Below, in pieces: positions 15,336 through 39,734 of a stretch of 64,000 bases of DNA. The stretch is taken from positions 62,001-126,000 of the forward strand of contig NIVC01002413.1 of the NCBI GenBank assembly GCA_002269645.1, in the 5' to 3' direction. The first letter of the stretch is position 1. Each line of letters starts with the position of its first letter. Under the pieces are notes generated by a model, which did not search any database, was not told where the DNA came from, and saw nothing but the letters and a program-made list of their open reading frames with translations. The stretch comes from Macrostomum lignano. Its lineage: Eukaryota. A program made the position numbers and the translations under genes.

Positions 15336-15469
15336 CTGAGAAGCTGATTACTGCGCTGTCTAAAAAACAGATTATTGCGCTCGCTGAGACGTGGATTGTT
15401 GCACAACCTGAGAAAGCGATTATTGCATTAGCGGAAGTAACATTTGCACTAGCTACTTGCTGTCTCGTG

Positions 15470-19294: not shown

Positions 19295-19312
19295 ATAGAT
19301 AGATAGACAGAC

Positions 19313-19346
<34 letters not shown>

Positions 19347-19379
19347 GTAGATAGACAGATAGATAGATGGATAGATCAG

Positions 19380-19427
<48 letters not shown>

Positions 19428-19644
19428 TAGATAGATAGATAGATAGATAGATAAGTAGATAGACAGATAGATAGATAAGTAGATAGACAGATAGATAAGT
19501 AGATAGACAGATAGATAGATAAGTAGATAGACAGATAGATAAGTAGATAGACAGATAGATAGATAGGTAGACGGATAGACAGATAGATAGATCAGTAGAT
19601 AGATAGATAGATAAGTAGATAGACAGATAGATAAGTAGATAGAC

Positions 19645-19675
<31 letters not shown>

Positions 19676-19680
19676 CAGAC

Positions 19681-19714
<34 letters not shown>

Positions 19715-19747
19715 GTAGATAGACAGATAGATAGATGGATAGATCAG

Positions 19748-19783
<36 letters not shown>

Positions 19784-19788
19784 CAGAC

Positions 19789-19830
<42 letters not shown>

Positions 19831-20020
19831 GTAGATAGACAGATAGATAGATAAGTAGATAGACAGATAGATAAGTAGATAGACAGATAGATAGATAAGT
19901 AGATAGACAGATAGATAAGTAGATAGACAGATAGATAGATAGGTAGACGGATAGACAGATAGATAGATCAGTAGATAGATAGATAGATAAGTAGATAGAC
20001 AGATAGATAAGTAGATAGAC

Positions 20021-20055
<35 letters not shown>

Positions 20056-20060
20056 CAGAC

Positions 20061-20098
<38 letters not shown>

Positions 20099-20131
20099 GT
20101 AGATAGACAGATAGATAGATGGATAGATCAG

Positions 20132-20163
<32 letters not shown>

Positions 20164-20168
20164 CAGAC

Positions 20169-20218
<50 letters not shown>

Positions 20219-20410
20219 GTAGATAGACAGATAGATAGATAAGTAGATAGACAGATAGATAAGTAGATAGACAGATAGATAGATAGGTAGACGGATAGAC
20301 AGATAGATAGATCAGTAGATAGATAGATAGATAAGTAGATAGACAGATAGATAAGTAGATAGACAGATAGATAGATAGGTAGACGGACAGATAAACAGAT
20401 AAATCGATAG
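19295..20410. repeat. (GATA/GACA)n microsatellite with internal block duplications
   Basis: Read directly. The marker GGTAGACGGATAGACAG recurs near 19565, 19941 and 20285. Confidence 0.95.
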
Positions 20411-21144
20411 GACAGATAGCCAGGCAAAAGGCAATACGTGTCTGCTGCATTCATACTTCGCATTATTTTGCATATTAATATTTGTTTCTTCTTCGTTTTC
20501 CTTGTTTGTTTGTTGCTATTCTTTTTCACAAACTTTCCTTTCTGCAGCTCCCAACATTATAATTGTATGTCTACTTCGCTCCAGTTTTTATGTTAATGCC
20601 CGCTCCTTGCTACTATACATAAACGTTAGTAAGTAGTATACATACTAGATTCCTGGTAATCTAAACACCCAGTAGATCTACAGTCGATCCACTGCCAGTC
20701 CCTGCCCTATTTTTCTGCTCTCACCGCTTCACCCATTGTATTTGTTATTGTTATAATAGTACATCTTAATAGTGCATCCTCTTCAAGTACCCCGTGTACT
20801 TACTGTGTACTGTTACGGCTTTGCCTCTGCGGTTCAGTGTTCTCAATCGCCCATTATTATTATAAATAAGGCTTGTTGCTCCGTCTGCTCCCTATATTAT
20901 TCAGTTCAATCCCCTTTTATGACTTTGTCGCTAAAAATCTAATTGGTAAAACAGGGCAACGTAGGCCCGTCTATTTAACCTAAAATATATACGAGACTAT
21001 TCCGCATCTTCAATTTGAAAATAAAAACGGTAAAACCCCTATTAAACGATTACTATTATTATTATTATTGTACTGCGTTTGGTTTTAACTTTTTCTTCTC
21101 TGCCTTTTGTCTGCTTTGTTCTTAACTTCTGGTCATCTGTTACA

Positions 21145-21492
21145 TCGATTGATAGATCAATAGATAGATAGACAGATGCATGGATAGATAGGTAGATAGA
21201 TAGATAAATAGATAGATAGCTAGCTAGATAGATAGATACATGAATAGATGCATGGATAGATAGATAGATAGATAGATAGATAGGTACCTGGTAGGTAGAT
21301 AGATAGATAGTTAGATAGATAGATAGATAGTTAGATAGATAGATAGATAGATAGATAGATATATAGCTAGGTAGATAGATAGATAGGTAGATAGATAGAT
21401 AGCTAGGTAGATAGATAGATAGATAGCTAGCTAGGTAAATAGATGCATGGATAGATAGGTAGATAGATAGATAAATAGATAGATAGATAGAC

Positions 21493-21523
<31 letters not shown>

Positions 21524-21545
21524 AGATAGATAGGTAGGCAGATAG
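21145..21545. repeat. (GATA)n microsatellite
   Basis: Read directly. Confidence 0.95.
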
Positions 21546-21650
21546 ACATGTTTCATAGACAGAATAGAAATAGCAGGCGTATTATTTGATTAAGCTACTA
21601 ACAGTAGTTTTCAATTGCAAAGCAACTCCCCCGTAACCCCAACTGATGAC

Positions 21651-24600
21651 ATGACAGAGCGTGAAAAATGGTCCTGCCCTGTGTGCACCTACGCCAACTG
21701 GCCCGCGTCCCGTCACTGCGTCTGCTGCCGCACTAAAAAGTGCTTAGTAGGCGTTTCCAATAGCAACAGCGGCGGCAACAACAGTCGGGCTCCGACTGCG
21801 ACGACGAAAACTGCGAATTCAAAAACCAATTCGACAACGTTGTCGACGTCAGCCGCCGAGCAGAGCGAAGCTGACGGCGAAAATGACGACGATGACAATG
21901 AAGAAGACGATGACGGTTGCCATGGCAACCGGACAGGCGACGAGGACGAAGAGGAAGAAGAAGAAGACATCTACAAACTGGCCGCCGGTCGCAGTCGTCG
22001 ACGTAGCAGACAGAAACAGCGCCAGCGTCAGAGTCGGCGCCGCATTCTGCCCGACGATGCCGTCATTGCCGATGAATCGACGACGACGACGGCTGCGTCG
22101 ATGTCGAGAACGACGCCGGCGGCAGGCGGGGCTAGAACGTCGCCGCCGATCAGGCCGCCCGGCTCGCCGTCGGAGCTGAAGTGGTCCTGTCCGGCTTGCA
22201 CCTTCTTGAACTGGCCGCGGTCCCACCGGTGCGTCCAGTGCTACACCGAGAACTCCAACCCGCCTCCGAGCTCAGCGTCGCCGCCGCCGGCAGCTCCTCC
22301 ATCGGCTACGTCGTCTTCGTCGCCGGATCCTTCGGCAGCGTCCCTAGCAACCGGCGTTGCGCCGCCTAATCAAAATCAGTCTACAAATCCATTTGGCAAA
22401 TGGGCTTGCAAGATTTGCACGTACGAGAATTGGCCTAACACGGCTAAATGTGCCATGTGCGAGCGGAGACGCTCGGAGAGTCCGCCTGCAGAGGGCGCCA
22501 CCGGCGGAGGGGGCGGCGGCGTCGGTGTCGGCGGCAGTTCGTCGGTGATCTGCGGCGGTCGGCAGTCGCCTAATCACGATCACGACTTTCTGTGGCTGTG
22601 CGCCTGTCTAGCGGCAGTTGACGGCGACTCTGGCCCTGTGGAGGCTTACATCAACGCTCCTGGGGCTTCGATTGCTAGGAGATTAACTAAAGCCGAGGCT
22701 GCTCAGTTGAACCGCTATCGCGGCAATGCTGTCTTTGCGCCTAACATGAGCTTATCATCCTTGTTAGTGAGATACAGCGCCTCTCAGGAACAGCTCATGT
22801 CTCTGCTTGTGCAGGCGGTGCATCTCAGGTTTGTGGATTAAGAATCCACCCTAAACTAGCACATCTACCAAGAATCTACCCTAAACTAGCACAACTACCA
22901 AGAATCTCCCCTAAACTAGCACAACTACCAAGAATCTACCCTAAACTAGCACACCTACCGAGAATCTACCCTAAACTAGCACAACTACCAAGAATCTACC
23001 CTAAACTAGCACCCCTACCAGGAATCTACTCTAAACTAGCACATCTACCAAGAATCCACCAAAAGCTAGCATCTGGGACAAAGAATCTGCCCTAAACTAG
23101 CACATCTACCAAGAATCTACCCTAAACTAGCACATCTACCAAGAATCTACCCTAAACTAGCACCCCTACCAGGAATCTACTCTAAACTAGCACATCTACC
23201 AAGAATCCACCAAAAGCTAGCATCTGGGACAGAGAATCTGCCCTAAACTAGCACATCTACCAAGAATCTGCCCTAAACTAGCACACCTACCAAGAATCTA
23301 CCCTAAACTAGCACAACTACCAAGAATCTACCCTAAACTAGCACACCTACCAAGAATCTACCCTAAACTAGCACACCTACCAAGAATCTACCCTAAACTA
23401 GCACACCTACCAAGAATCTACCCTAAACTAGCACATCTACCAAGAGTATACCCTAAACTAGCACACCTACCAAGAATCTACCCTAAACTAGCACACCTAC
23501 CAAGAGTATACCCTAAACTAGCACACCTACCAAGAATCTACCCTAAACTAGCACACCTACCAAGAGTATACCCTAAACTAGCACACCTACCAAGAATCTA
23601 CCCTAAACTAGCACACCTACCAAGAATCTACCCTAAACTAGCACACCTACCAAGAATCTACCCTAAACTAGCACACCTACCAAGAATCTACTCTAAACTA
23701 GCACACCTACCAGGAATCTACCCTAAACTAGCACATCTACCAAGAATCTACCCTAAACTAGCACCCCTACCAGGAATCTACTCTAAACTAGCACATCTAC
23801 CAAGAATCCACCAAAAGCTAGCATCTGGGACAAAGAATCTGCCCTAAACTCTGGAGTAGAGATTATTTCCCACCGGTAAACTGGCTTATAGGAAAGTAAA
23901 ATCTACTCTAACCTACCTAACTACATGTCGGTATATTCTTAAACAAAATTACCCTATCCCACACTACAGGTCGCACACGAAGCGACTACCCTGCCAGGTG
24001 TCGCCAGAGACTGCGCTCGACATACGTCGCCACGTTGTTGGCAGCCTGCGTCAACGCAAAGGCCCCCTGCCCTGCTTCTACGTAAACGATCACAGCCTGT
24101 TCTATCTGCCCGCCAGTCTGGGCTATCACGAGCTGCCGCAGCACGTGCAAGATCAGCTAATGAGCGATGTAGTCGATTCCGCTGTGCAGAAAGGTTCGCT
24201 ATTAATTATTCGATCTGTATTTTTGATACATATCGGTAGACTGTGTTTAGTTTTTTGTCGTTTTTCATTCCAAGGAAGTTTAATGTTCATAATTGGTCCT
24301 GTGTTCGTTGGTCAATGTAGGTTTGTCGGTTTCGATAGGTTTTAGGTAGGACAGGTTTTAAATTTTGAGAGGATAATAAGTTATTCAATTTTTGATACAT
24401 ATCGGTGGGATCAATGTAGGATCGGCTTTGAATATTGTGAAGACAATAGTTAATTCTATTTTCGATACATATCGGTAGTCATTGTAGGATCGGCTTTGAA
24501 TATTGTAAAGACAATAGTTAATTCTATTTTCGATACATATCGATAGGGTCAATATAGGATCGGATTTGAATATTTTGAAGATAATGCTTTTTTATTTTCG

Positions 24601-26184
24601 ATACATATCAGTAGGGTCAATGTGAAACCAACCAAATATTGTAAAGATCATATATAATTTATTCTATTTTCAATACATATCGGCGCCACTATAATTATTG
24701 ATAACAGAACTGGAATCGGTTGGCGCCGTCAACTGGTGGCCAGCCGACAGCGGCGCCTTTCGAATGTGGGCGCTGTGGAACCGGACAGCAGGGGACTGCC
24801 TGCTGGACAGCGTCCTGCAAGCCAGCTGGGGCATCCTGGACGAGGACAACAGCATGCGCCGGGCTCTGTCCGAGTCGCTGCACGACTGCGAGGACGCTTT
24901 CTACAGTCGCTGGCGCGACTACGAAGAGCAACAGCTGGCCACCTCGTTGCTCTGCTATTCGTTGAGCGAAGCGCAATGGCGTCGCGACTGGGAGGCTTTG
25001 CTTCGCCGGGCCAGGATGCCTGGCGAGTCCCTTGAGCAAATTCACGTATTCGCTCTGTGCCACGTGCTTCGCCGACCAATTATTATTTTGGGAGTGAGGA
25101 TTATCTGCAATTATCGAGACGAGCCCATTGCCTATTCAAACTTTCAGGTTTGTACTCTCTTTTCGATACATATCGTCGAAGATTCATAGCTGATTTAATA
25201 GTATTGTTTCGATACATATCGGTGTAGGTTCATAGCTGAATTAATAGTATTGTTTCGATACATATCGGTGTAGGTTCATAGCTGAATTAATAGTATTGTT
25301 TCGTTACATATCGGTGTAGGTTTATGGATGACAATAATATTATTTCGATACATATCGGCTTAAGTTTATCGATGATTTCAAATGTTGTTTCGATACATAT
25401 CGGTTTAAGCTTATAGATTAATCAATAATATTTTTTCGGTACATATCGAGAAGGGTTTAAACAAAACCAAAAACATTCCTCTCAGGGTGTCTACCTGCCG
25501 TTGCTATGGGAACGCGCATTCTGCTCCCGGAATCCGTTGTGCCTGGCCTACACTAAGAATCATTTCTCAGCTTTGATGCCGTTGCAATCGCCGTCGCGTA
25601 GGCCGGATATTGTCGGCCTGAGCGGCGGGAACGCCTACGGCCTGTTGCCGTTGTGCGATCGGTACGGCGTCCGCCTACCTGTGCACTTTCTAGCCGCCGA
25701 CGAGGCCAATAGGCGAGAGTCTCTCCTAGCCGACTGGCTCGACTGCGTCAGGTGCGGAGTCGGCGGCCAGCAGCTGATGTGCCGCGTCAGGCTGGGCTGC
25801 GGCCGGCCGCACCCGCTGGTGCACCAGCTGCTGTGCCAATGGCTGGATCACTACCGCCTGTCAGCCGCCGCCGCCGACAATGACAACCTGGACAACAATA
25901 ACAGCGGTAGCAATAATCATACTGAAGACTTTGTTGATAGTCGCGACGAAGATGAACGAGTGCCGTGCAACTCGCCGGAGTTGATCTCATCGTCAACTTC
26001 GTCGAATTCTTCGACTCGATCATCGTCGTCAACTTCGTTGTACGATCAGCAACAAGAGAAGCTGGCCAGTGACAATACGGTTGGAAATGCTACTCACGCT
26101 ACTACCAGTAGTAGTAATGTTGGCATTGAAGAGGCTGAACTCACTTCCAGTGTCGCGGCTCCATCTTCTGCCGAATTCAAGTAG
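21651..26184 (+). CDS. ZRANB1: OTU deubiquitinase TRABID/ZRANB1, ~846 aa; exons 21651-22828, 23970-24193, 24708-25147, 25486-26184
   Basis: Three NZF fingers (W.C..CT[YF].NW....C..C), the AnkUBD (FLWLCACLAAVDGD..VEAY), and the OTU motifs ALWNRTAGDCLLDS and AYTKNHFSAL. Splice phases 2, 1, 0 are consistent. Confidence 0.95.
22841..23850. repeat. 30-bp minisatellite AAGAATCTACCCTAAACTAGCACACCTACC (TRABID intron 1)
   Basis: Tandem copies. Confidence 0.95.
24395..25450. repeat. TTTCGATACATATCGG-core repeats in TRABID introns 2 (24395-24620) and 3 (25160-25450)
   Basis: The same core recurs on both sides of exon 3. Confidence 0.8.
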
Positions 26185-26389
26185 CGACAAGTTGAACTTT
26201 AAATATATTGGAATTTTTTAAATTGCCAACTGAAAGTAGATTCTGCGAGACTAGCTTTAAAGGTGCGTGAAGGTTAATCTGGTTACATTCATTTTAGATA
26301 AATACTGGCTTCCATTTAGTTTAGTTTGTAGAGTAGTTTTACATTATTGGACTCGTGTTCATTTTTACTGATGCAAATCGTAATACTGC

Positions 26390-27235
26390 AGTTAGCGCCA
26401 AATCAAAATCTCTGGAATAGACGCCAAATCAAAAATCTCTGGAATTGGCGCCAAATCAAAATCTCTGCAATTGGCGCCAAATCACAATCTCTGGAATTGG
26501 CGCCAAATCAAAATCTCTGGAATTGGCGCCAAATCAAAATCTCTGGAGTTGGCGCCAAATCAAAATCTCTGGAATTGGCGCCAAATCAAAATCTCTGCAA
26601 TTGGCGCCAAATCACAATCTCTGGAATAGGCGCCAAATCAAAATCTCTGGAATTGGCGCCAAATCAAAATCTCTGGAATTGGCGCCGAATCAAAAATCTC
26701 TGGAATTGGCGCCAAATCAAAATCTCTGGAATTGGCGCCAAATCAAAATCTCTGTAATTGGCGCCAAATCAAAATCTCTGGAATTGGCGCCAAATCAAAA
26801 TCTCTGGAATTGGCGCCAAATCAAAGTCACTGGAATTGGCGCCAGATCAAAATCTCTGGAATTGGCGCCAAATCAAAATCTCTGTAATTGGCGCCAAATC
26901 AAAATCTCTGGAATTGGCGCCAAATCAAAGTCACTGGAATTGGCGCCAGATCAAAATCTCTGGAATTGGCGCCAAATCAAAATCTCTGTAATTGGCGCCA
27001 AATCAAAATCTCTGGAATTGAGATTCCAGAGTCACAGAATCACTTAATAAGAATCACATAATCACCATAATCACAATCTCTGGAATTGGCGCCAAATCAC
27101 AATCTCTAGTATTGGTGCTAAATAAAAAAACGCCAGAATTGGCGCCAAATCACAATTTCTGAAATTGGCGCCAAAGCTAAATCTTTAGCAGTGGGACCAA
27201 ATAAAAAAACTTCAGAATTGGCGCCAAATCAAAGT
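26390..27235. repeat. 26-bp minisatellite AATTGGCGCCAAATCAAAATCTCTGG
   Basis: Tandem copies. Confidence 0.95.
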
Positions 27236-27854: not shown

Positions 27855-30390
27855 GGCCAAGGCTCATGAGGGAATCGCCGAGATTTCAAGGCTCATGAGG
27901 GAATCGCTGAGATGCCAAGGCTCATGGGGGAATTGCTGAGATTTCAAGGCTCATCGGGGAATGGCTGAGATTTCAAGGCTCATGGGGGAATCGCCGAGAT
28001 TTCAAGGCTCATCGGGGAATGGCTGAGATTTCAAGTCTCATGGGGGAATTGCCGAGATTTCAAGGCTCATCGGGGAATGGCTGAGATTTCAAGGCTCATT
28101 GGGGAATGGCTGAGATTTCAAGGCTCATGGGGGAATTGCTGAGATGCCAAAGCTCATGGGGAATCGCTGAGATGCCAAGGCTCATGGGGGAATCGCCGAG
28201 ATTTCAAGGCTCATTGGGGAATGGCTGAGATTTCAAGGCTCATGGGGGAATTGCTGAGATTTCAAGGCTCATTGGGGAATGGCTGAGATTTCAAGGCTCA
28301 TTGGGGAATGGCTGAGATTTCAAGTCTCATGGGGGAATTGCCGAGATTTCAAAGCTCATCGGGGAATGGCTGAGATTTCAAGGCTCATGGGGGAATTGCT
28401 GAGATGCCAAGGCTCATGGGGGAATTGCTGAGATGCCAAGGCTCATGGGGGAATTGCTGAGATGCCAAGGCTCATGGGGGAATTGCTGAGATGCCAAGGC
28501 TCATGGGGGAATTGCTGAGATGCCAAGGCTCATGGGGGAATTGCTGAGATGCCAAGGCTCATGGGGGAATTGCTGAGATGCCAAGGCTCATGGGGGAATT
28601 GCTGAGATGCCAAGGCTCATGGGGGAATCGCCGAGATTTCAAGGCTCATCGGGGAATCGCTGAGATTTCAAGGCTCATGGGGGAATTGCTGAGATGCCAA
28701 GGCTCATGGGGGAATTGCTGAGATGCCAAGGCTCATGGGGGAATTGCTGAGATGCCAAGGCTCATCGGGGAATGGCTGAGATTTCAAGGCTCATGGGGGA
28801 ATTGCTGAGATGCCAAGGCTCATGGGGGAATTGCTGAGATGCCAAGGCTCATCGGGGAATTGCTGAGATTTCAAGGCTCATGGGGGAATTGCTGAGATGC
28901 CAAGGCTCATGGGGGAATTGCTGAGATGCCAAGGCTCATGGGGGAATTGCTGAGATGCCAAGGCTCATGGGGGAATTGCTGAGATGCCAAGGCTCATGGG
29001 GGAATCGCCGAGATTTCAAGGCTCATGGGGGAATTGCTGAGATGCCAAGGCTCATCGGGGAATCGCTGAGATGCCAAGGCTCATGGGGGAATTGCTGAGA
29101 TGCCAAGGCTCATGGGGGAATTGCTGAGATGCCAAGGCTCATCGGGGAATTGCTGAGATGCCAAGGCTCATGGGGGAATTGCTGAGATACCAAGGCTCAT
29201 GGGGGAATTGCTGAGATGCCAAGGCTCATGGGGGAATTGCTGAGATGCCAAGGCTCATCGGGGAATCGCTGAGATGCCAAGGCTCATGGGGGAATTGCTG
29301 AGATGCCAAGGCTCATGGGGGAATTGCTGAGATGCCAAGGCTCATGGGGGAATTGCTGAGATGCCAAGGCTCATGGGGGAATTGCTGAGATGCCAAGGCT
29401 CATCGGGGAATTGCTGAGATGCCAAGGCTCATGGGGGAATTGCTGAGATGCCAAGGCTCATCGGGGAATCGCTGAGATTTCAAGGCTCATGGGGGAATCG
29501 CCGAGATTTCAAGGCTCATCGGGGAATCGCTGAGATTTCAAGGCTCATGGGGGAATTGCTGAGATGCCAAGGCTCATGGGGGAATCGCCGAGATTTCAAG
29601 GCTCATGGGGGAATTGCTGAGATGCCAAGGCTCATCGGGGAATCGCTGAGATTTCAAGGCTCATGGGGGAATTGCTGAGATGCCAAGGCTCATGGGGGAA
29701 TTGCTGAGATGCCAAGGCTCATGGGGGAATTGCTGAGATGCCAAGGCTCATGGGGGAATTGCTGAGATGCCAAGGCTCATCGGGGAATTGCTGAGATGCC
29801 AAGGCTCATGGGGGAATTGCTGAGATGCCAAGGCTCATCGGGGAATTGCTGAGATGCCAAGGCTCATGGGGGAATCGCCGAGATTTCAAGGCTCATGGGG
29901 GAATCGCCGAGATTTCAAGGCTCATTGGGGAATGGCTGAGATTTCAAGGCTCATGGGGGAATTGCTGAGATTTCAAGGCTCATTGGGGAATGGCTGAGAT
30001 TTCAAGGCTCATTGGGGAATGGCTGAGATTTCAAGTCTCATGGGGGAATTGCCGAGATTTCAAAGCTCATCGGGGAATGGCTGAGATTTCAAGGCTCATG
30101 GGGGAATTGCTGAGATGCCAAGGCTCATGGGGGAATTGCTGAGATGCCAAGGCTCATGGGGGAATTGCTGAGATGCCAAGGCTCATGGGGGAATTGCCGA
30201 GATTTCAAAGCTCATCGGGGAATGGCTGAGATTTCAAGGCTCATGGGGGAATTGCTGAGATGCCAAGGCTCATGGGGGAATTGCTGAGATGCCAAGGCTC
30301 ATGGGGGAATTGCTGAGATGCCAAGGCTCATGGGGGAATCGCCGAGATTTCAAGGCTCATGGGGGAATCGCCGAGATTTCAAGGCTCATG
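27855..30390. repeat. 29-bp minisatellite GAGATGCCAAGGCTCATGGGGGAATTGCT, with one inverted copy at 31121-31157
   Basis: Tandem copies. GAGCCTTGAAATCTCGGCGATTCCTCATGAGCCTT at 31121ff is the reverse complement of the first unit. Confidence 0.95.
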
Positions 30391-31289
30391 GTGAGATTTG
30401 AGATTTGAATGGCTGAGAAAGGCTGAGCATGGGAAGGCATGATGAAAGTTCCTTAGAGCCTCATATTTTACCTGTAAAAATAACTGTTTCCTAACGAGAG
30501 TGTGTTCCACAAGTCCTACCCATTTTGAGTATTTATTGATCAACAAAACAGAAGCAGGCACTTTCACCGTAAAACATATGGAACACCCCTCGTACTTAAG
30601 CATGATATTATCTCGTAGTTAAGTAATGGACAGTTTTATTTAATAAATATACCAGTAAACGTGAGTTTGTTATGCCTAAAGTAAAAATAATTAATTGATG
30701 TCTAAATAGATGAATACATTTTTGACTAACTTATCCTAAAATAGTTGTTCTGCATATTTGTAACAGGGTAACGACTTTGTTATATCTGCATACGAGCGTA
30801 CGAGAGACAGGTAATTTACATGTAAGACAAGCAAAATTCCTCAATTTAAACTGATGTATTAATAACATTTAAGTTGGTAACTTGTACTAATTTATTTATT
30901 GAAAAACTCTCGCAAAAATTTTACCCCATTATCTATAGCATATTGACATGACTATGACAAAGTGAGCTGTACGGCTGAATAAGTGTAACAATGATACAAA
31001 ACTGTGCAGTTTCGAAAATCCCAATACAGTACTGTACTAAAGCATAAAAATTTATTACATAAAGTGACAATTTCAGTTATTAGTTTTAGCGGAATGAAAC
31101 TTTAGCAATCCCCAGATGATCGAGCCTTGAAATCTCGGCGATTCCTCATGAGCCTTATAATCAGTCAGAATTTTTCATTCGAAACAGTGGATCCGAAGTC
31201 GCATCTGTAGGGGGTCTCATTTCAAGGAGGCGAAATTGCGACATGAAAAAATTGCAAGTCCATGATTTCGGTATGACACGTTTCGCGTT

Positions 31290-34200
31290 TCATAAGTACA
31301 GCTTCTTGGACAGCTGGGACACAATCTGCGGCACTGCATAGCAAGCAACAACACCTTGCGCACTTTCAATCGGAGTCTCCTTGAGTCGCCGGTTCACAAT
31401 GGTGAGCATGTCGGCCAGGTGCTCAGTGCGGTGGTACTCCGTAATTACCTTGCACAGAGTCTGTATGAATGGCGAAACTTCCTCCTCGGTGTTGCCCCGG
31501 TACGAAGCGTATCCTTCGGTGGCTGAGTAGAAGATCAGGATGTCGCTCTCGACTGGGCTGTACGAACTGTCACCGCTGGGCCCAGAGTCTGTGGGTCGTT
31601 GAACGTCCATCCGTTCTCCACGACACGCTTGGATGATGAACACCTTTGGTTTGTGTTGTAGTGCTGAGCAATGGTAGGAGTTGAACTGGTCTACAATTTC
31701 CTTGATTAGCAGTTCCTTTCCGTCCCGTACTACAATTTTTCCGTTGTTTCCATGGGCCATAATCACGCATATCAGCCAGCCATGATTTTCAAGTCTCGTG
31801 CTGTATTTTGCCAAATTTTTAAGATCCTTCTTCATCTCCTTGTGTCCTTGATTCTCAAATACTTCGATTTCACAACTCAGCTCGGTCGCCATCTTGCGTA
31901 GAGCATTTACGTCGCTGCTAGATCCTACGCGTTGATCGTATCTACTTTTGTCCTCGTAATCGCAAATGTTGAAAACTAGAAACAGTCCAGATGACGCCAA
32001 ATGACTGTATCGAAGTGCGTCTTCAACTCCACTTGATCTGCAATATAAAATCGTTTTGTCAACCTTGATGGTGCTTGTGTGTCCTGGACGGATAGTGTTG
32101 ACCCTGTCTGATGGGTGCTCGCTCGGGCTGCCTGATTAACGAGACTCAAGCTCTAGCAGTTGGAACACCCAGCTCCACAAGGTCCAACCTATACTATGCT
32201 GGCCCGACCTAGAGTCTCCTGGTGGATCTCCTAGCAACCTCGTTTAACAACAAAACAGTTTTACTTTCTACTTTTTTGGCATAGTTAATCAGATGGCCTA
32301 ATCAGTAATGTCTAATCTAGAATTTTGCGGAGCTGGTAAAAATCAACCGCATAATCGATAGATCGATCGGGACACTGCATGGAAAGCAACCTACTATTGC
32401 AAAAGTACATGGCGGAATTCCCGTAACACGGCGCCGAACAACTATTCAGCTAGACCCTCATGCTGGCAGACAGGGTTTTTACTAATAGACAGGCTGTGCT
32501 GTGAGTAGGTGCTCACGCAGGGTGTAGAGTGGCCCTTTACCTTTCTAATCGCCAGGCTTGTACGTACACTTTGTCTTGGGGTTGGCCCTTATACATGTAG
32601 TAGGAGTAAATCGTACGACAACCTCCCAAACCACTTTTTGTGTCAATACGACTCAATAGTTTCGTTTCGCGTCATGAGTTTAAAAATAAGAAATAAAGTT
32701 TTTTTTCAAAAAGATGCCAATACGGTGACTAACCTTTTGCTGCTGTTGCTCCTCCAATTGCGAATGCGCTCTCTTATGGACAACTGCGATTCAGTCTTTC
32801 TCATGCCAGCAGTCGTGTTTGCGTCTCTCTCCGTTATTGAGGAGTCCGGAGAGACGCCGCTGGCTCTGCAAAAGGCGCATTCGGAATTAAATTAAACCAG
32901 AGTCACTCTAGGCATATGTTACTGTTGGCAGGCAATTAACGTACGTCTGCATCAGTGTAGACAGTGCCGGGTTCAAAGCGCTGCTCTTAGACAGCACTAG
33001 CGCTGTCCTGCCTTGGCTGTCTTCCATTGTGCAGTCGGCGCCCATGCTCACCATGGTGAGAACTGTGCTAGCAACCTGGCTTGGCGATGTTGCCGCCCAC
33101 ATCACTGGCGTCTGGCCTTCCGAGTCGCTTATGTTGACCGGCACGCCCTCCTCAACCAGAAGCTTCACCGCGTGCATCTTACTGCGCAGTGCGGCAAAGT
33201 GCAAGCTGGTTTCGCCGTTCACATCCGCTGCCGTCGGATCGCCGACTTGAATTAAGGCGTGTAGCGTTTGTTGCTTTTTTTCTAACGGTTTGATGTCGGA
33301 TTCAGCTGCCCAGGAGAGCACAGTACGACCCGTTTCATCTGGCAGGTCACAATTAACTCGAGTGACCACCAGCTGCAGCTCGGTGTAGTTTCCTTCTATC
33401 GCCAGGCGCTTCATCTTTTCAAATTGGCTCTGTTGGTGCAAGTTTGTCAATAAGAGGCTTCATCAGTTTTCTGTAGTTTCGTGTGGCAAATTTGAAAAAT
33501 CACTACATAGGTTTTTTAATTAACTTAAACTTACTTTATTCGCAAGACGGCGGAGCTTTGGCTTTCGGTCATCTGATAGCAACAATTTTGCTTCGCTGCG
33601 GTGAATCAATGAATGGAAGTTTAGTCAATTGAGTATGTTGTTGAATATTTCTGCACTCAAATGCCTGGTATGTAAGGTTGGCACGCCCTATCCGCGTGAT
33701 TAGCCTTGCACCCACCCGGCCCGGCTCCATTTCATCTTGCTCTGACACTCGCCCCTTTTGCAGAGCATCGTTCCCATTTTACCTCTTGAAGTGACGGTTC
33801 GTTGGTTTGTGAGCTGGGTAGCTGTGTGGGGTTTGTTTGCCTAGCTTTATTCACTTTGTTTGCATTTTGCCCTTGCGATCAGCGTGTTCCATAATGTACT
33901 CAGTAAACCAATGCGTACTCTGTGCAATACAATGTACATTGTTTTCGATATCTGCCCCCCCATTGGTAACTGCATATCAAATGCATATTCTTGTAGGTTT
34001 TCATTTGTACATACATCTGTGAGCTATGCGTTTGTGAGCTACATCTGGGGCAAAATGCGCTGCTGGTGAAAAGATTTGCGGGCAAAACTCTTGCTCCTCC
34101 CATTGTTCTTGATTTGCTGTTTTTTGCTTACTTGCTTATAATTTCGTCCATTTCCTGTACAATGTCTCTGTTATGATGGCTGTCTTTGGCCAGGGCCAAC

Positions 34201-34987
34201 GCAGTCTTTCCTTTCTTATTCCTGATATTCAACAGTTCCTCCTTTTTGGGGAAATATCGCTTCTGCCTGAACAAGTGCAGCAGGTGCTTGGCACATCTAA
34301 ATCGGCAATTCCGCACAGCCTCCATCAGTGGGGTGCAGTTCTCTCCGTTTGTCAGAAATTTGGCCTCAAACGGTAGCAGAGCGAGAATCCGCAAGTTGCC
34401 GCACCTTGCCGCCACGTGAGCCGCCGTGTCGCCGTTGCAGTCTACGGCGGCTGGGTCTGCCCCCAGTTTTAGGATGTGCTCAATGCACCTCGAGTATCGC
34501 TTGTGAGGACAGGAAACTTTTGCAACGGCTATGAGCACAGTGCATCCTTTGCTGTCTTTATCTTTTAGAATTTCGCGTAGATTTTTTATTTCGAGCAAAC
34601 GATCGATTTTTCCGTCGAAAATGAGGTCTATAACCTGAAATTCGTGCAAAAGTACACAAATCTATGTAGTGCATGCTATTTGTCAGTGCAGGAGCATACT
34701 GGCGCACTCTGGCTTCTGATAATTCGAAGGCTGGTTGGTGATAAACTGAACTCCGATAGTGTAAATTTAAATACAAATTTAGAAAGCGCTGGCTTAAAAT
34801 ACACGGACATTTATAGGTGCATTTAGACACGGATATGGGGGCAATTTTGAAATGGTTCAAAAGACGCAAACTGTACATGTATCATTAGGACAGTCTAATT
34901 TTGAAATGTACCTTAGATGCAAGATGCATAATTATACATTTAAAAGCATTTGCGCACCCTTACCTGTTGATAGGACTCGTTAGCCAT
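31290..34987 (-). CDS. Ankyrin-repeat caspase, 606 aa; exons 34987-34964, 34634-34132, 33595-33535, 33429-32945, 32037-31290
   Basis: Caspase catalytic MAHG and QACRG, plus the substrate-pocket Arg residues (DQR, SYR). Two blocks of ~4 ankyrin repeats. Donors GTAAGG, GTAAGC, GTAAGT, GTACGT with CAG acceptors give phases 0, 2, 0, 2 and an uninterrupted 1821-nt CDS. Confidence 0.8.
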
Positions 34988-35469
34988 TAATAGCAGCAGG
35001 TGAAATAATTAAAATAATTATTTTATGTTGGGCCTCAGACGACACTAAAGTTTTGGCATCTGCTGAGTGTTGTGGGTAGATATATAGACACGATAGCAGA
35101 AGTCACACAGCTAATTAAAAATAGATATGACGAGACAATTCACCCTAGTGTTCGTTAAAACAGTGTACTAATATTTGCTCTTAGATCAACAGTGCTCTTT
35201 TCAAGGCACTCTACTCAAAACGAACTACTTGGGTATAAAATTTCTTTTGGCCTCTGTGTTATGACTGTTCGTTATTGTGCAAAGTCTGAGTTTCAGAACA
35301 ACACTGTGTTTTTTAACACTGTACAGACATTTTTAGTATTAAAGTAGCAATCTTCGCCCCCCCCCAATGGGGGACATCTGGATAGAATCCTTGTTCTTTA
35401 CAAATAAACAAATAGACAGCGAAATAAAGCTTTCATAAAAAAACAACAGACATTCCCTATAAAAAAAAC

Positions 35470-36290
35470 ATCCCAAGACAGCAAGCATCCCCTGACAGCA
35501 TTCAAGCATCGATCCCAAAATAGCAAGCATCCCCCAGACTGCAAGTATCCCCCAGACAGCAAGCATCCCCCAGACTGCAAGTATCCCCCAGATAGCAAGC
35601 ATCCCCCAGATAGCAAGCATCCCCCAGATAGCAAGCATCCCCCAGATAGCAAGCATCCCCCAGATAGCAAGCATCCCCCAGACCCCAGATAGCAAGCATC
35701 CCCCAGATAGCAAGCATCCCCCAGATAGCAAGCATCCCCCAGACCCCAGATAGCAAGCATCCCCCAGATAGCAAGCATCCCCCAGACCCCAGATAGCAAG
35801 CATCCCCCAGATAGCAAGCATCCCCCAGACCCCAGATAGCAAGCATCCCCCAGATAGCAAGCATCCCCCAGACCCCAGATAGCAAGCATCCCCCAGATAG
35901 CAAGCATCCCCCAGACCCCAGATAGCAAGCATCCCCCAGATAGCAAGCATCCCCCAGACCCCAGATAGCAAGCATCCCCCAGATAGCAAGCATCCCCCAG
36001 ACCCCAGATAGCAAGCATCCCCCAGATAGCAAGCATCCCCCAGACCCCAGATAGCAAGCATCCCCCAGATAGCAAGCATCCCCCAGACCCCAGATAGCAA
36101 GCATCCCCCAGATAGCAAGCATCCCCCAGACCCCAGATAGCAAGCATCCCCCAGACCCCAGATAGCAAGCATCCCCCAGATAGCAAGCATCCCCAGACCT
36201 CAGATAGCAAGCATCCCCCAGATAGCAAGTACCCTCCATCCCCCAAGAGCAAGCATCTCCCAATAGCAAGTTATCCCAGTAGCTACTTAG
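35470..36290. repeat. 18/25-bp minisatellite GATAGCAAGCATCCCCCA(GACCCCA)
   Basis: Tandem copies between the two first-exon duplicates. Confidence 0.95.
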
Positions 36291-36413
36291 GGCAAGCGAT
36301 ATTCAGGAAACTTTTGCAGCACACATTCTAATTGTAAGACGCATTAAGACGCTTAATGATACATAATTATACATTTCTAAGTTCATGGGTGTATGCGTCC
36401 CAGTCACCCTTAC

Positions 36414-36437
36414 CTGTTCATAGGAATCGTTCGCCAT
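36414..36437 (-). CDS. Duplicated first coding exon (MANDSYEQ) of the ankyrin-caspase gene, within a diverged copy (~36320-36740) of ~34880-35340
   Basis: ATGGCGAACGATTCCTATGAACAG|GTAAGG versus ATGGCTAACGAGTCCTATCAACAG|GTAAGG (MANESYQQ). Both are phase 0. Confidence 0.6.
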
Positions 36438-36989
36438 TAACAGAAGCAGGTAGAATAAAAAAATAATGCTATGCTAGCCAAAGACAGCACTAAATCTTAT
36501 GCATTTGCATAGCGGTTGTGGGCAGATATAGACACAATAGATGTAAAGCTAATTAAAAATAGACCTGACGAAATACTTGTAGGTTCCTTGAACAGTGCTT
36601 CTCTTGTACCTGCGCTCACCTTTGCACTTTTCAATAGTTCAATAAAGGCTTCTTTTTGCCTGTGTTACGACTGTTCGTTAGTGTGCTAGTCTCTGAGTTT
36701 CAGAACAATACAGTTTTTTTCAACACTGTACGAACATCTTTAGCAATAAATATAGAGGTCAGTCAATTTAGGGACTTAGAGCTAAATATCAATAATAAAA
36801 ATGAATTAAGAGCAGCAATTACTAAACTCATCGTTTACTCGTATTTTGAGCCAGTTAAGCAGCCCAGCAAGAACTCAGTTTTAGGTCAATCGGCAGTTAG
36901 CATGCACTGTGTATTTCAATATAAATAACAATTCGTTTAATGCATTTGTTTGAATATTAGCTTTATAGAGAGAAATGTAGACGCATACG

Positions 36990-37170
36990 TTTGAACTGGA
37001 GAGAGTGTACATTGGGGAAGGGGTTTTGAACTGGAGCGGGTGTACATTGGGGAAGGGGTTTTGAACTGGAGCGGGTGTACATTGGGGAAGGGGTTTTGAA
37101 CTGGAGCGGGTGTACATTGGGGAAGGGGTTTTGAACTGGAGCGGGTGTGTACATTGGGGAAGGGGTTTTG
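36990..37170. repeat. 35-bp minisatellite TTGAACTGGAGCGGGTGTACATTGGGGAAGGGGTT, ~5 copies
   Basis: Tandem copies. Confidence 0.9.
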
Positions 37171-37274
37171 AATCGGACAGAGGGTCCATTGGGGTGAAAG
37201 AATAGTACATTCTAATATCTAATATGATTTTAGCAATTAATTTCTCACATAAATGATGAAAATATTCGTACAAG

Positions 37275-39559
37275 TCACTTCAAATTAGGCGGCTCCTCAA
37301 TTCGCAGCTGTTGCCGCACCTCTGCCAATGGTTGGTGCCAATTCCTTTCAAAGTAATAATTTATGGTCAGATCCGCATCCGAGCCAGTGCGCAACGCGTA
37401 GGCCAGGTAACCGCCCTCCTGCAGGTAGCGTCGTGTCTGCTTCGGGCGAAGCCGCAAGCTGCCTAGAAACGCCCCAGTAACGCACATCGGCAAGCCAGTT
37501 TGAAATGCTTCAAACCATTTGACGACAACTTCTCCGAGGAAGTCTGTGCCCTGCAAGAGTCGTTGCAGGTAACACAGGTAAAATAGGAAAGAAGTGATTA
37601 TTGTCATGGTGTCAATAGAACTCATTTCCTAGAATTCACTGTGTAATTATAAAACGGCCCTTTTCGGGCTGCTTAAATTTACTGCACACTTTACCCTAGC
37701 AACGTAAATGAAATATTAATCATTTCTCACCTGTCCCAGCAGTACGTGATTAAGGTCGTGAATCTCTCTGTACCGCTGCATCACGTAGGCCAGTTCGGGA
37801 TCGTCAACGAAGCACACGGTTCGGCGATGGTCGGGACTGTAGCCGTAGCGGTCGAGGAAGTCGGCGTAGGCTCTGCCGAGGCTGCCTTCGGGCAGGCGGC
37901 GCAGGGCCTCCAGGTCGATGCTGCCGCCGCCTGCGAGGGGGAGACACAAGAGCGATTCTTGAGGGGCGATTGTTGAGGGCGATTCCTAAAGGCGATTCTT
38001 GAGCGCGATTCTTAAGTGGCGAATACTGAAGGGCGATTCTTAAAGAGCGATTCTTAAGGGGCGATTCTTAAAGGGCGATTCTTGAGGGCGATTCTTAAAG
38101 AGCGATTCTGAAGGGGCGATTCTTAAAGGGCGATTCTTGAGGGCGATTCTTGAGAGCGATTCTTGAGAGCGATTCTTAAAGGCGATTCTTAAGAGCAGTT
38201 CTTGAGGGCGATTCTTAAAGGGCGATCTTAAGGGGCGATTCTTAATGGGCGATTCTTGAGGGCGATTCTTTAGAGCGATTCTTAAGGGCAGTTCTTAAGG
38301 GCGATTCTTAAAGGCTATTCTTAGGGGCAATTCTTGAGGGCGATTCTTGAGTGGCTATTCTTGAGTCTTGAGGGGTGATTCTTAAGGGACGATTCTTGAG
38401 AGTGATTCTTGAGGGGCGATTCTTGAGGGCCGATTCTTGAGGGCAATTAATGAGGGAGATTTATAAGAGCGATTTTTGCTAACTTGCGCAAACTTTTAAA
38501 AAGTATTTTTGGTCTTACATGTAAACAAAACCACCTTAAAACTTTTTCGCTTTCCAGAAGAAAGACCAAAGAAAGCGAAAAAAACAGGTTGATATCTACC
38601 TAGAGCACCCAGGTGACACACACGTCTTGGGCGAAATCATCTTACAGCCAACGCTGAGAAAATTCTGCCCTGGGCATTTACATGTATACTCTTTGTACCT
38701 TGTGGGTTGGCCCTCACGGATGTGAATGGCACGAATGTGGCCTGGAATCGAACCCGGAATCGCAATGAGAGTGCTGGCGCCCCTGCTGCTGGCACCCCTG
38801 GTGCTGGCGCCCCTGGTGCTGGCGCCCCTGGTGCTGGCGCCCCTGGTGCTGGCGCCCCTGGTGCTGGCGCCCCTGGTGCTGGCGCCCCTGGTGCTGGCGC
38901 CCCTGGTGCTGGCGCCCCTGGTGCTGGCGCCCCTGGTGCTGGCGCCCCTGGTGCTGGCGCCCCTGGTGCTGGCACCCCTGGTGCTGGCGCCCCTGGTGCT
39001 GGCGCCCCTGGTGCTGGCGCCCCTGGTGCTGGCGCCCCTGGTGCTGGCGCCCCTGGTGCTGGCGCCCCTGGTGCTGGCGCCCCGTGATGCGGCTACGCCC
39101 CTGATATTTCTATGTCAACTTAAAATGCGTCCTGAGAAAGCCACATTTATGCCATTCTAAGAAACACAAACCTTCGACAGTTCGAATGCGCGGCCTCTCC
39201 GCCAGAATTCGACGCCCCTCTTCATTTGCCAGCATGTCGTCGCGAAGTAGTCGAAGCGCCCACTCGCCCGTGGTCTCGCCGAACGCCGAGATCATGTCGT
39301 CGCGCCAGGGCGCCGCCAGGCAGGCGACGCCGGAGCCAACGGCGAGGAAAACGCGCTGGCCGCAGTCCAGAGGCCGATGGTTCGGGTAGCGGCGAATGTC
39401 GCCCAATGGCAGCAGGTCCGGGTCGAAGTCGTCGTCAATGGCGAGGGTGTCGCCGGGTTCCTGCGATGACGCATTGGATGACGTCATTGGGCGTCGTTGA
39501 GAGGCTGCCAAGCTGAGCAACCGCCCAGATTGAGCGAATAGTCTCCGGGAGAGAAGCAT
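37275..39559 (-). CDS. COQ4: Ubiquinone biosynthesis protein COQ4, ~287 aa; exons 39559-39172, 37930-37731, 37550-37275
   Basis: PWRDDMISAFGETTG, ERPRI, LPEGSLGRAY, YVMQRYREIHDLNH (HDxxH) and GEVVVKWFEAFQTGLPMC, with an Arg/Ser-rich mitochondrial presequence. Splice phases 1, 0. Confidence 0.95.
37955..38480. repeat. ~14-bp minisatellite GGGCGATTCTT(AAA/GA)
   Basis: Tandem copies in COQ4 intron 1. Confidence 0.9.
38775..39083. repeat. 15-bp minisatellite GGCGCCCCTGGTGCT
   Basis: Near-perfect tandem copies in COQ4 intron 1. Confidence 0.95.
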
Positions 39560-39734
39560 GACAAATATTGTGTTATTGAGTCATCATTTAGTAATGAGTC
39601 AATCAACTGTCTGTCATTACTAAAAAGGTCATACTACTATCGGTTAGGAATTGAGTCATCGACTAGAGATGAATCTTTATTAGGAATGTAAAATTTTTTT
39701 TGAACTACAGATGGGTCACGATTGGTCACGAATC

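What the first reader, a model, noticed from the sequence alone, without database searches (positions are those of the whole stretch)
31290..34987. Hidden single gene: an ankyrin-repeat-prodomain caspase (ANK4-linker-ANK4-caspase)
The ORF track shows three separate genes. The apparent stop codons of both ankyrin ORFs lie inside introns just past good donors (AGC AA|GTAAGC at 34132/31; CAG AC|GTACGT at 32945/44). A 61-nt exon missed by the track (33595-33535, EAKLLLSDDRKPKLRRLANK, CAG acceptor, GTAAGT donor) converts phase 2 to phase 0. The caspase exon (acceptor ttttatattgcag, starts 32037) needs exactly phase 2. An 8-codon first exon (MANESYQQ) supplies the ATG. The result is a stop-free 606-aa protein with intact His-Gly and QACRG. 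Established: initiator caspases use CARD, DED or DD prodomains. An ankyrin array in that position is non-canonical and suggests a protease activated by direct ligand or protein sensing (inference). Whether the architecture is already described in this lineage needs a search.
Basis: partly seen in the sequence, partly recalled or inferred. Interest (0 to 1): 0.88.

Follow-up and report, generated by a model that had tools for sequence, protein, structure and literature searches.

The report
Flatworm caspase with ankyrin-repeat prodomain
The three apparent ORFs are one spliced gene of the free-living flatworm Macrostomum lignano encoding a caspase with a long double ankyrin-repeat prodomain. The gene is real but already annotated, unnamed, in GenBank, and it belongs to an undescribed lineage separate from the published flatworm "ANK caspases".

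Summary
The five minus-strand exons join through GT-AG introns into a stop-free 606-aa protein with Ank repeats and Peptidase_C14 (E 4e-42), and His-Gly and QACRG are intact.

With it the product is 650 aa, collinear from Met to stop with GenBank PAA91632.1. That is a 652-aa, 95.7%-identical model derived from RNA-seq, at a 97%-identical copy of this locus in Macrostomum lignano.

The architecture is not new. "ANK caspases" were reported in Schistosoma in 2014 and defined as a flatworm clade in 2024.

Two things are new:
- This gene is not in that clade (0 of 200 bootstraps), and its ANK module does not match theirs. It belongs to a separate M. lignano family. In that family one conserved double-ANK module is fused to a caspase, a kinase, or both.
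- M. lignano also has a true Casp.Ank orthologue, PAA88208. This contradicts the published claim that ANK caspases are restricted to parasitic flatworms.

The likely mechanism is inferred, not shown: a rigid ANK recruitment module, a disordered tether with Asp sites, and a caspase-3-like domain with a conserved TD|SG processing site.

Interest is moderate.

The parts
34964..34987 (-). Exon 1. It holds the ATG and 8 codons (MANESYQQ), with donor gtaagg.
   Evidence: One search gives the splice context. One search shows an in-frame TAA 8 codons upstream. The N-terminus is identical in P0001, P0002, P0003 and P0424.
34132..34634 (-). Exon 2 (503 nt, phase 0 to 2). It encodes the first ankyrin block, aa 9-175: an N-cap helix pair plus four repeats.
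   Evidence: The AF2 helix pattern has pLDDT above 90 here. It is an internal duplicate of exon 4, with 27% identical self-hits.
33535..33595 (-). Exon 3, a 61-nt micro-exon (phase 2 to 0) encoding NEAKLLLSDDRKPKLRRLANK. It links the two ANK blocks and restores the reading frame.
   Evidence: The junction is confirmed in paralogues, which carry an in-frame 6-nt deletion here. AF2 models it confidently as the end of a helix plus a beta-hairpin. It is the most divergent segment between the two locus copies, at 85% identity.
32945..33429 (-). Exon 4 (485 nt, phase 0 to 2). It encodes the second ankyrin block, aa 197-358: a cap plus four repeats.
   Evidence: dN/dS is 0.12 against the sister locus, the most constrained part of the gene.
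32734..32865 (-). It is probably a cassette exon and forms most of the disordered tether. It contains the Asp-X sites VSPD|S and TERD|A.
   Evidence: One search shows it is in frame with strong splice sites. It is present in P0001, P0424, P0422 and P0423 and absent from P0002. pLDDT is about 30. One search lists the Asp sites.
31290..32037 (-). Last exon (748 nt, entered in phase 2). It encodes the end of the tether (GVED|A) and the complete caspase domain, with p20, the intersubunit linker containing RPTD|SG, p10 and the stop codon.
   Evidence: Peptidase_C14 at E 4e-42. The best solved-structure match by sequence is caspase-3, at E 1e-27. The AF2 model has pLDDT 89 and TM 0.80-0.87 to caspase-7/-3/-6.
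31051..31056 (-). AATAAA, the candidate polyadenylation signal, 234 nt downstream of the stop codon.
   Evidence: This is a sequence match only.
36414..36437 (-). Diverged duplicate of the promoter plus exon 1 (ATG GCG AAC GAT TCC TAT GAA CAG | gtaagg, encoding MANDSYEQ). It lies 1.45 kb upstream and is separated from exon 1 by a satellite array. It could be an alternative first exon or a relic.
   Evidence: 77% identity over about 300 nt, with the ATG and donor preserved. One search lists the ORF. The same arrangement is present in the sister locus L002.

Best explanation
**What it is (shown).** This is a six-exon gene of Macrostomum lignano on the minus strand, 34987-31290. It encodes a 650-aa procaspase. 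An exon-skipped form would give 606 aa. The product has three parts:
- a rigid N-terminal unit of two ankyrin blocks (cap plus 4 repeats each) joined by a structured linker, aa 1-358;
- a disordered tether of about 55 aa that holds the alternative exon and three Asp-X sites;
- a complete caspase domain with the catalytic His/Cys dyad and the Asp-specific S1 residues.

**How it most likely works (inferred).** The protein is made as an inactive zymogen. The double-ANK unit acts as a protein-binding module. It recruits or concentrates the zymogen on a partner that is not yet known. Activation then follows from proximity and from cleavage at RPTD552|SG in the intersubunit linker. This site aligns with caspase-3 IETD175|SG. 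Cleavage at GVED408|A would release the protease from the ANK unit.

**Family context.** The same double-ANK module is found in M. lignano on protein kinases and on kinase-plus-caspase proteins. The module is therefore probably a shared docking adaptor that brings different effectors to one upstream partner.
For: **Gene model.**
- Splice sites, phases and the open frame are confirmed.
- The model is collinear with transcript-derived GenBank PAA91632.1 at 620/648 identity.
- The GenBank annotation is built from RNA-seq, with trans-splicing and poly(A) evidence (PMC5730564).
- The loci are 97.35% identical over 6.1 kb and share the same neighbours.

**Catalytic competence.**
- Pfam matches are strong.
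- H, QACRG and both S1 arginines are invariant across six M. lignano lineages that are only 27-38% identical, and across 50 caspases.
- The fold matches caspase-7/-3 with TM 0.8-0.87.
- TD|SG aligns with the caspase-3 processing site.

**Layout.** AF2 gives pLDDT above 90 for residues 1-358, including the micro-exon linker. It gives about 30 for residues 360-414 and for the intersubunit linker. The closest solved structures to the ANK unit are rigid DARPin-DARPin fusions and tankyrase ARC2-3, which are two-block peptide-binding ANK units.

**Shared module.** The ANK half matches M. lignano ANK-kinase proteins at 35-39% identity. It matches ANK-caspase and ANK-kinase-caspase paralogues collinearly at E 1e-45 to 1e-55. 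On contig NIVC01000875.1, caspase-domain exons lie 7 kb upstream of an ANK-kinase gene.

**Constraint.** ANK block 2 is under purifying selection, with dN/dS 0.12.
Against: - No expression, interaction or activity data exist for this copy. Transcript support comes from the 97%-identical sister locus.
- AF2 pTM is 0.61, so the model says nothing reliable about contacts between the ANK unit and the caspase domain. It neither supports nor excludes autoinhibition.
- The catalytic domain scores best against executioner caspases. Executioners are normally constitutive dimers activated by cleavage, not by recruitment.
- dN/dS against the sister copy is 0.71 overall and nominally above 1 in the caspase domain (11.5 nonsynonymous to 1.5 synonymous changes, not significant). 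Recent constraint on the protease is therefore not demonstrated.
- The ANK partner is unknown.
Confidence: 0.6

Rival explanations
1. Targeting rather than activation. The catalytic domain is executioner-like, a constitutive dimer switched on by an upstream caspase at TD|SG. The ANK unit only directs it to particular substrates or to a cellular location, or keeps it anchored until the tether is cut.
For: The best sequence and structure matches are caspase-3/-7/-6 and insect effector caspases. The executioner-type processing site is conserved. The tether is disordered and carries Asp-X sites that would free the protease.
Against: A 400-aa prodomain is unlike any characterised executioner. The NJ tree does not place the family inside the executioner clade, although support is very low. 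The same module sits on kinases, which fits a signalling scaffold better than substrate targeting.
Confidence: 0.25
2. A recently duplicated, functionally decaying copy. The window gene is one of several near-identical copies in a partly duplicated genome and is drifting toward a pseudogene. On this view the architecture tells us about the family but this copy does nothing.
For: The genome has 180 Mb of blocks at 95% identity or more (PMC5730564). The window copy is the outlier among five database copies, with 28 aa changes. dN/dS is 0.71 overall, and about 1 or higher in ANK block 1, linker 1 and the caspase domain. No exact match to the window protein was found in the protein collection.
Against: The ORF is intact across all six exons. 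All splice sites and catalytic residues are retained. Both indels relative to the sister copy are multiples of three. ANK block 2 has dN/dS 0.12. The number of changes is too small to separate relaxed from diversifying selection.
Confidence: 0.1
3. An artefact of gene modelling. On this view there are separate ankyrin genes and a separate caspase gene, perhaps on a polycistronic precursor resolved by trans-splicing, and they have been wrongly joined.
For: M. lignano does make polycistronic precursors, and about 7% of assembled transcripts are of this kind (PMC5730564). The authors of PMC11463336 themselves warn that unusual prodomains may be chimeric predictions.
Against: - Exon phases match exactly.
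- The caspase exon has no ATG that would preserve the first beta-strand, and its frame is entered in phase 2.
- The GenBank annotation pipeline cuts transcripts at trans-splice and poly(A) evidence, yet it still gives one 652-aa CDS.
- At least three further M. lignano lineages, only 27-38% identical, have the same ANK-then-caspase order.
Confidence: 0.04

Closest known systems
Platyhelminth 'ANK caspases' (Casp.Ank) of PMC11463336 (Genome Biol Evol 2024, evae204). That paper credits Lee et al. 2014 with first noting them in Schistosoma. Examples are E. granulosus KAH9278879.1 and S. mansoni XP_018647858.1.
   Same: Same phylum and the same domain order: N-terminal ankyrin repeats, a long low-complexity spacer, then p20/p10 with QACRG. 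In both cases the function is unknown and is proposed to be protein-protein recruitment.
   Different: - The window caspase domain never groups with Casp.Ank in the tree (0 of 200 bootstraps). Casp.Ank plus M. lignano PAA88208 group at 89%.
- Bit scores to Casp.Ank are 54-71. They are 125-146 to the window protein's own family and 60-95 to ordinary executioners.
- The window's double-ANK module has no detectable match to the Casp.Ank prodomains.
- The published clade was said to be restricted to parasites, and M. lignano was scored as lacking it.
M. lignano long-prodomain caspase paralogues: Mlig000705/009621 and Mlig009377 (ANK + caspase), Mlig018903 (ANK + kinase + caspase) and Mlig000293 (Ras/Roc + caspase). 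All are unnamed GenBank proteins.
   Same: The catalytic domains are the closest to the window's after its own near-identical copies. They form one clade with 42% NJ bootstrap and share the motifs YPVTxPQG, NHGxFVCxxMAHG and SQLSKK. In the three ANK-bearing lineages the double-ANK module is the same and collinear.
   Different: They are only 32-38% identical to the window caspase domain. One has a kinase inserted between the ANK unit and the caspase, and another has Ras/Roc in place of ANK. The 61-nt micro-exon seems specific to the window lineage. In the ANK-kinase gene examined, the linker lies inside the ANK2 exon.
Executioner caspases-3/-7/-6 (MEROPS C14A)
   Same: These are the best matches by sequence (E 1e-27) and by fold (TM 0.80-0.87). 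The dyad, the S1 residues and the TD|SG intersubunit site are all conserved.
   Different: Executioners have prodomains of about 25 aa. This protein has about 400 aa of ankyrin repeats and tether. Orthology is not shown, because the deep nodes are unresolved.
M. lignano ANK-kinase proteins (for example PAA entry Mlig034440g1 and UniProt A0A1I8 entries). Architecturally these recall RIPK4/ANKK1-type kinase-plus-ANK proteins (from my own knowledge).
   Same: They carry the same N-terminal double-ANK module, 35-39% identical over about 300 aa. One such gene lies 7 kb downstream of caspase-domain exons on the same contig.
   Different: The effector is a protein kinase rather than a protease. In RIPK4/ANKK1 the kinase is N-terminal to the ANK repeats, the opposite order. 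No homology to those proteins was tested.

Membership tests
Caspase (Pfam PF00656 Peptidase_C14; MEROPS C14A) | Significant match to the family profile over the full domain | tested here: met
   Peptidase_C14 at E 4.2e-42, 144.9 bits against a cut-off of 21.4, covering profile positions 3-233 of 233.
Caspase (Pfam PF00656 Peptidase_C14; MEROPS C14A) | Catalytic His-Gly and the QACxG cysteine | tested here: met
   H497-G498 and Q538ACRG542 are present. They are invariant in the alignments.
Caspase (Pfam PF00656 Peptidase_C14; MEROPS C14A) | Asp-specific S1 pocket: two Arg and one Gln, equivalent to caspase-3 R64, Q161 and R207 | tested here: met
   Domain positions R36, Q136 and R180 align with these residues (alignment). 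They are invariant or nearly invariant.
Caspase (Pfam PF00656 Peptidase_C14; MEROPS C14A) | Caspase/haemoglobinase fold | tested here: met
   The AF2 model has pLDDT 89.1 and pTM 0.88. Foldseek gives TM 0.80-0.87 to caspase-7, -3, -6, CED-3 and caspase-9. This is a predicted structure, not a solved one.
Caspase (Pfam PF00656 Peptidase_C14; MEROPS C14A) | Asp-directed endopeptidase activity | not testable with these tools
   This needs recombinant protein and Ac-DEVD/IETD/VEID substrates.
Casp.Ank clade of platyhelminth ANK caspases (PMC11463336) | Ankyrin repeats N-terminal to p20/p10 | tested here: met
Casp.Ank clade of platyhelminth ANK caspases (PMC11463336) | Catalytic domain falls inside the Casp.Ank clade | tested here: not met
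   NJ tree with 200 bootstraps. E. granulosus plus S. japonicum Casp.Ank group at 96%, and with M. lignano PAA88208 at 89%. The window family groups with them in 0% of replicates. This is a simple distance method with limited sampling and no DED caspases.
Casp.Ank clade of platyhelminth ANK caspases (PMC11463336) | Prodomain homologous to the Casp.Ank prodomain, beyond the generic ANK consensus | tested here: not met
   phmmer with the window ANK module gives no hit to KAH9278879 or TNN08539 and 19 bits to PAA88208. It gives 108-156 bits to the window's own family.
Executioner caspases (3/6/7 type) | Short prodomain without an interaction module | tested here: not met
   About 400 aa precede the catalytic domain, including two ANK blocks.
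Executioner caspases (3/6/7 type) | Catalytic domain orthologous to the executioner clade | tested here: inconclusive
   Similarity ranking favours caspase-3/-6/-7. The NJ tree puts the family outside the executioner clade, with support of 6% or less at the deep nodes.
Apical (initiator) caspases | Death-fold prodomain (CARD or DED) | tested here: not met
   Pfam finds only Ank families in the prodomain at E up to 0.1. AF2 shows ankyrin helix pairs throughout residues 1-358.
M. lignano double-ANK-module family (caspase, kinase and kinase-caspase effectors) | Collinear match of both ANK blocks and the linker to other members, well above generic ANK similarity | tested here: met
   phmmer E 1e-45 to 1e-55 over residues 6-357 to P0241, P0167 and P0158. 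Identity to the ANK-kinase proteins is 35-39% over 41-51% of the query, against about 23% for generic ANKRD44-type hits.

The most novel reading that the evidence does not exclude
Macrostomum lignano carries two independent kinds of ankyrin-prodomain caspase.

1. PAA88208 is an orthologue of the neodermatan Casp.Ank. That clade therefore predates parasitism and is not a parasite innovation as published.
2. The family that includes this window gene is a second, undescribed lineage. One conserved two-block ANK module has been combined with a caspase, one or two kinases, or a kinase plus a caspase. At least one locus has caspase exons and an ANK-kinase gene as close neighbours.

On this reading the family is a modular adaptor-effector system for cell death or immune signalling. 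The ANK module docks different effectors onto a common upstream partner or ligand.
Probability: 0.3. Interest if true: 0.6.

Novelty: new variant of a known kind. Interest (0 to 1): 0.4.

Why it matters
Caspase activation is usually explained through death-fold prodomains (CARD, DED). Flatworms lack FADD, and parasitic flatworms also lack DED caspases (PMC11463336). How non-CARD caspases are activated in this phylum is therefore open.

This locus matters in three ways:
- It gives a clean, transcript-consistent gene model for an ANK-prodomain caspase in a free-living flatworm in which transgenesis has been established (PMC5730564).
- It shows that such caspases are not confined to parasites, and that the ANK prodomain appears in at least two separate lineages.
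- The shared ANK module on kinases and caspases offers a concrete experiment: find the partner of the module.

The sequence itself is already public, and no function is shown, so the gain is modest.

Tried and rejected
- **Other copies in the window.** tblastn with the 650-aa model found only the gene itself.
- **AF2 on the window model.** I used the 95%-identical P0001, which lacks the last 35 aa, and modelled the window caspase exon separately.
- **Neodermatan ANK caspases in the protein searches.** None appeared among the 120 listed hits of the full-length search, the caspase-domain search or the profile search, and the only ANK-bearing proteins in the top 150 of the exhaustive search were M. 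lignano's and one jellyfish protein. I obtained these sequences from the bioRxiv supplement instead.
- **First bootstrap tree.** It timed out and was redone with a faster distance routine.
- **Exon versus intron conservation as a selection test.** This was uninformative, because the two locus copies are about 98% identical in both.
- **dN/dS.** The counts per region are too small (43 changes), and the caspase-domain excess is not significant at p = 0.75.
- **Foldseek on the full-length model.** It returned only generic two-block ANK structures with high rmsd, so no specific homologue can be named.
- **Conservation of the micro-exon in an ANK-kinase paralogue.** It is not conserved there, so I do not claim a mobile three-exon cassette.
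- **Other literature.** Searches for further metazoan Ank + Peptidase_C14 descriptions found only PMC11463336.
Full report
**Observation**

The window is from the free-living flatworm Macrostomum lignano. All close protein matches come from that species, and window 31095-37194 aligns at 97.35% identity to GenBank contig NIVC01000083.1.

Every boundary is a canonical AG|exon|GT junction, the phases work as described, and the 1821-nt CDS gives 606 aa with no stop. Pfam finds Peptidase_C14 (E 4.2e-42, full-length domain) and several Ank families (Ank_2 at E 6e-26). An in-frame TAA lies 8 codons upstream of the ATG, and an AATAAA lies 234 nt past the stop codon.

**A missed exon**

Its acceptor is ttttgcag and its donor is gttagt. 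It is open in the required frame and preserves phase 2. Including it gives 650 aa.

Database proteins settle the matter. GenBank PAA91632.1 (Mlig027210g2, 652 aa) is collinear with the six-exon model from Met to the last Leu, at 620/648 identity. PAA47072.1, PAA91635.1 and UniProt A0A1I8HW26 also contain the exon.

The GenBank annotation of this assembly derives from a genome-guided RNA-seq transcriptome whose gene ends were set by trans-splicing and poly(A) evidence (PMC5730564). A single mRNA joining the ANK and caspase parts is therefore supported for the sister locus. The window copy differs from all database copies by about 4% at the protein level, and no exact match was found. The assembly is known to contain 180 Mb of duplicated blocks at 95% identity or more.

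**Anatomy**

- Residues 1-358 form one confidently predicted unit with pLDDT above 90. It has two blocks, each a cap helix pair plus four ankyrin repeats, joined by a long helix and a beta-hairpin encoded by the 61-nt micro-exon.
- Residues 360-414, comprising the cassette exon and the start of the last exon, are disordered (pLDDT about 30).
- The caspase domain is confident, except for its intersubunit linker.

The two ANK exons are internal duplicates with the same phase, 0 to 2. The micro-exon, whose length is 1 mod 3, restores the frame between them. The closest solved structures to the ANK unit are rigid DARPin-DARPin fusions and tankyrase ARC2-3. These matches are generic and have high rmsd.

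The window caspase exon modelled alone has pLDDT 89 and pTM 0.88. It superposes on caspase-7, -3, -6, CED-3 and caspase-9 at TM 0.80-0.87. By sequence the best solved match is caspase-3 at E 1e-27. R, H-G, QACRG and the second S1 Arg are all conserved, and RPTD552|SG aligns with the caspase-3 processing site IETD175|SG. The Asp-X sites in the tether are VSPD365|S, TERD372|A and GVED408|A.

**What is known**

PMC11463336 (Genome Biol Evol 2024) defines 'ANK caspases' as a flatworm clade, first seen in Schistosoma (Lee et al. 2014). It states that they are restricted to parasitic flatworms. For M. lignano it reports only a 'protein kinase pro-domain' caspase as sister to them. Its preprint Table S1 scores M. 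lignano ANK-caspase as 'N/A'.

**Where this gene belongs**

An exhaustive HMMER search with the caspase exon found 5298 relatives. After its own near-identical copies, the best single-domain hits are other M. lignano long-prodomain caspases:
- Mlig000293 (Ras/Roc + caspase);
- Mlig000705 and Mlig009377 (ANK + caspase);
- Mlig018903 (ANK + kinase + caspase).

The ANK modules of the ANK-bearing paralogues match the window's collinearly at E 1e-45 to 1e-55. The same module also heads a set of M. lignano ANK-kinase proteins, at 35-39% identity. On contig NIVC01000875.1, caspase-domain exons lie 7 kb upstream of such an ANK-kinase gene. A profile of the family's catalytic domains ranks caspase-3/-6/-7 and insect effector caspases first.

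I took the published Casp.Ank sequences from the preprint supplement and built an NJ tree with 200 bootstraps:
- E. granulosus and S. japonicum Casp.Ank group at 96%.
- M. lignano PAA88208 joins them at 89%. Pfam confirms that PAA88208 has Ank plus Peptidase_C14.
- The window family forms a separate clade at 42% and never joins Casp.Ank (0%).
- The deep nodes are unresolved, at 8% or less.

The window ANK module has no detectable match to the Casp.Ank prodomains. Two conclusions follow, within the limits of a simple distance tree:
- M. lignano does possess a Casp.Ank orthologue, so that clade is not parasite-specific.
- The window gene represents a second, undescribed ANK-prodomain lineage.

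**Selection**

The two locus copies are about 98% identical in exons and introns alike, so conservation contrast is uninformative. Nei-Gojobori dN/dS is 0.71 overall. It is 0.12 in ANK block 2 and about 1.1 in ANK block 1 and linker 1. It is nominally 2.2 in the caspase domain (11.5 nonsynonymous to 1.5 synonymous changes, not significant).

One feature is unexplained. The last exon has 13 mismatches in 748 nt, while the adjacent 695-nt intron has none (Fisher p = 2.6e-4). Five of the changes cluster at aa 473-486. Over longer times the catalytic residues are invariant across paralogues only 27-38% identical.

**Mechanism**

The following is shown: one gene, a rigid double-ANK unit, a disordered tether, and a complete Asp-specific caspase domain with an executioner-type processing site.

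The following is inferred. The ANK unit is a protein-binding module that recruits the zymogen to an unknown partner. Activation is by proximity and by cleavage at D552. Cleavage at D408 would release the protease. The cassette exon changes the tether length and the number of Asp sites. The reuse of the module on kinases suggests a common docking partner.

The rivals are:
- substrate or location targeting of an executioner-like enzyme (0.25);
- a decaying recent duplicate (0.1);
- a modelling artefact (0.04).

**Verdict**

The gene and the architecture class are already public. This is nonetheless a distinct variant of the ANK-caspase theme, and together with PAA88208 it corrects a published statement about the distribution of these caspases. 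Interest is 0.4.

Noticed in passing
window 36414-36437 (minus strand), with upstream sequence to about 36650: A 77%-identical duplicate of the promoter region plus exon 1. The ATG, 8 codons (MANDSYEQ) and the gtaagg donor are preserved. It lies 1.45 kb upstream of the real exon 1 and is also present in the sister locus. It could be an alternative first exon or a relic.
   Followed up: partly
window 28003-30391, 35520-36270 and 36990-37172: Three tandem-repeat arrays flank the gene. A 29-nt unit repeated 82 times lies downstream. Arrays of 18/43/86/129-nt units lie between the two exon-1 copies. A 35-nt unit repeated 5 times lies further upstream. All are shared with the sister locus L002. They produce long spurious ORFs in the ORF list.
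   Followed up: partly
window about 37260-39560 (minus strand) and about 25714-27020: By synteny with L002, the upstream neighbour is a Coq4-family gene and the downstream neighbour is an OTU / RanBP-type zinc-finger gene. The window coordinates are extrapolated from the alignment and were not modelled.
   Followed up: no
window 31290-32037 compared with 32038-32733: Against the sister locus, the last exon has 13 mismatches in 748 nt, mostly nonsynonymous, with five at aa 473-486. The adjacent intron has 0 mismatches in 695 nt (Fisher p = 2.6e-4). This could reflect gene conversion of the intron or diversifying change in the exon. It is unexplained.
   Followed up: partly
M. lignano PAA88208 (sequence from the supplement of bioRxiv 10.1101/2023.12.11.571055): This 599-aa protein has Ank plus Peptidase_C14 and groups with neodermatan Casp.Ank at 89% bootstrap. 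The paper's Table S1 nevertheless scores ANK-caspase as absent from M. lignano, and its text says free-living flatworms lack them.
   Followed up: yes
L001 (GenBank NIVC01000875.1), 2025-2931 and 10001-23674: Caspase-domain exons lie 7 kb upstream of an ANK-plus-two-kinase gene (P0004), on the same strand. This suggests that family members with different effectors are arranged in tandem.
   Followed up: partly
proteins P0006 and P0007 (UniProt A0A1I8J237 and A0A1I8HDW0): These are two M. lignano proteins of 921-931 aa. They have the same N-terminal double-ANK module, followed by about 600 aa with no Pfam match. They may carry a further, unknown effector.
   Followed up: no
protein P0260 (EukProt, jellyfish Sanderia malayensis): This 1127-aa model has ANK + caspase + ANK + caspase. 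It is either an independent cnidarian ANK-caspase or a fused tandem pair.
   Followed up: no
protein P0003 (UniProt A0A1I8HKM7, 412 aa): This database model of the same gene family jumps from inside the micro-exon region to the middle of ANK block 2, and from there to the middle of p20. It is probably a mis-prediction rather than an isoform.
   Followed up: no
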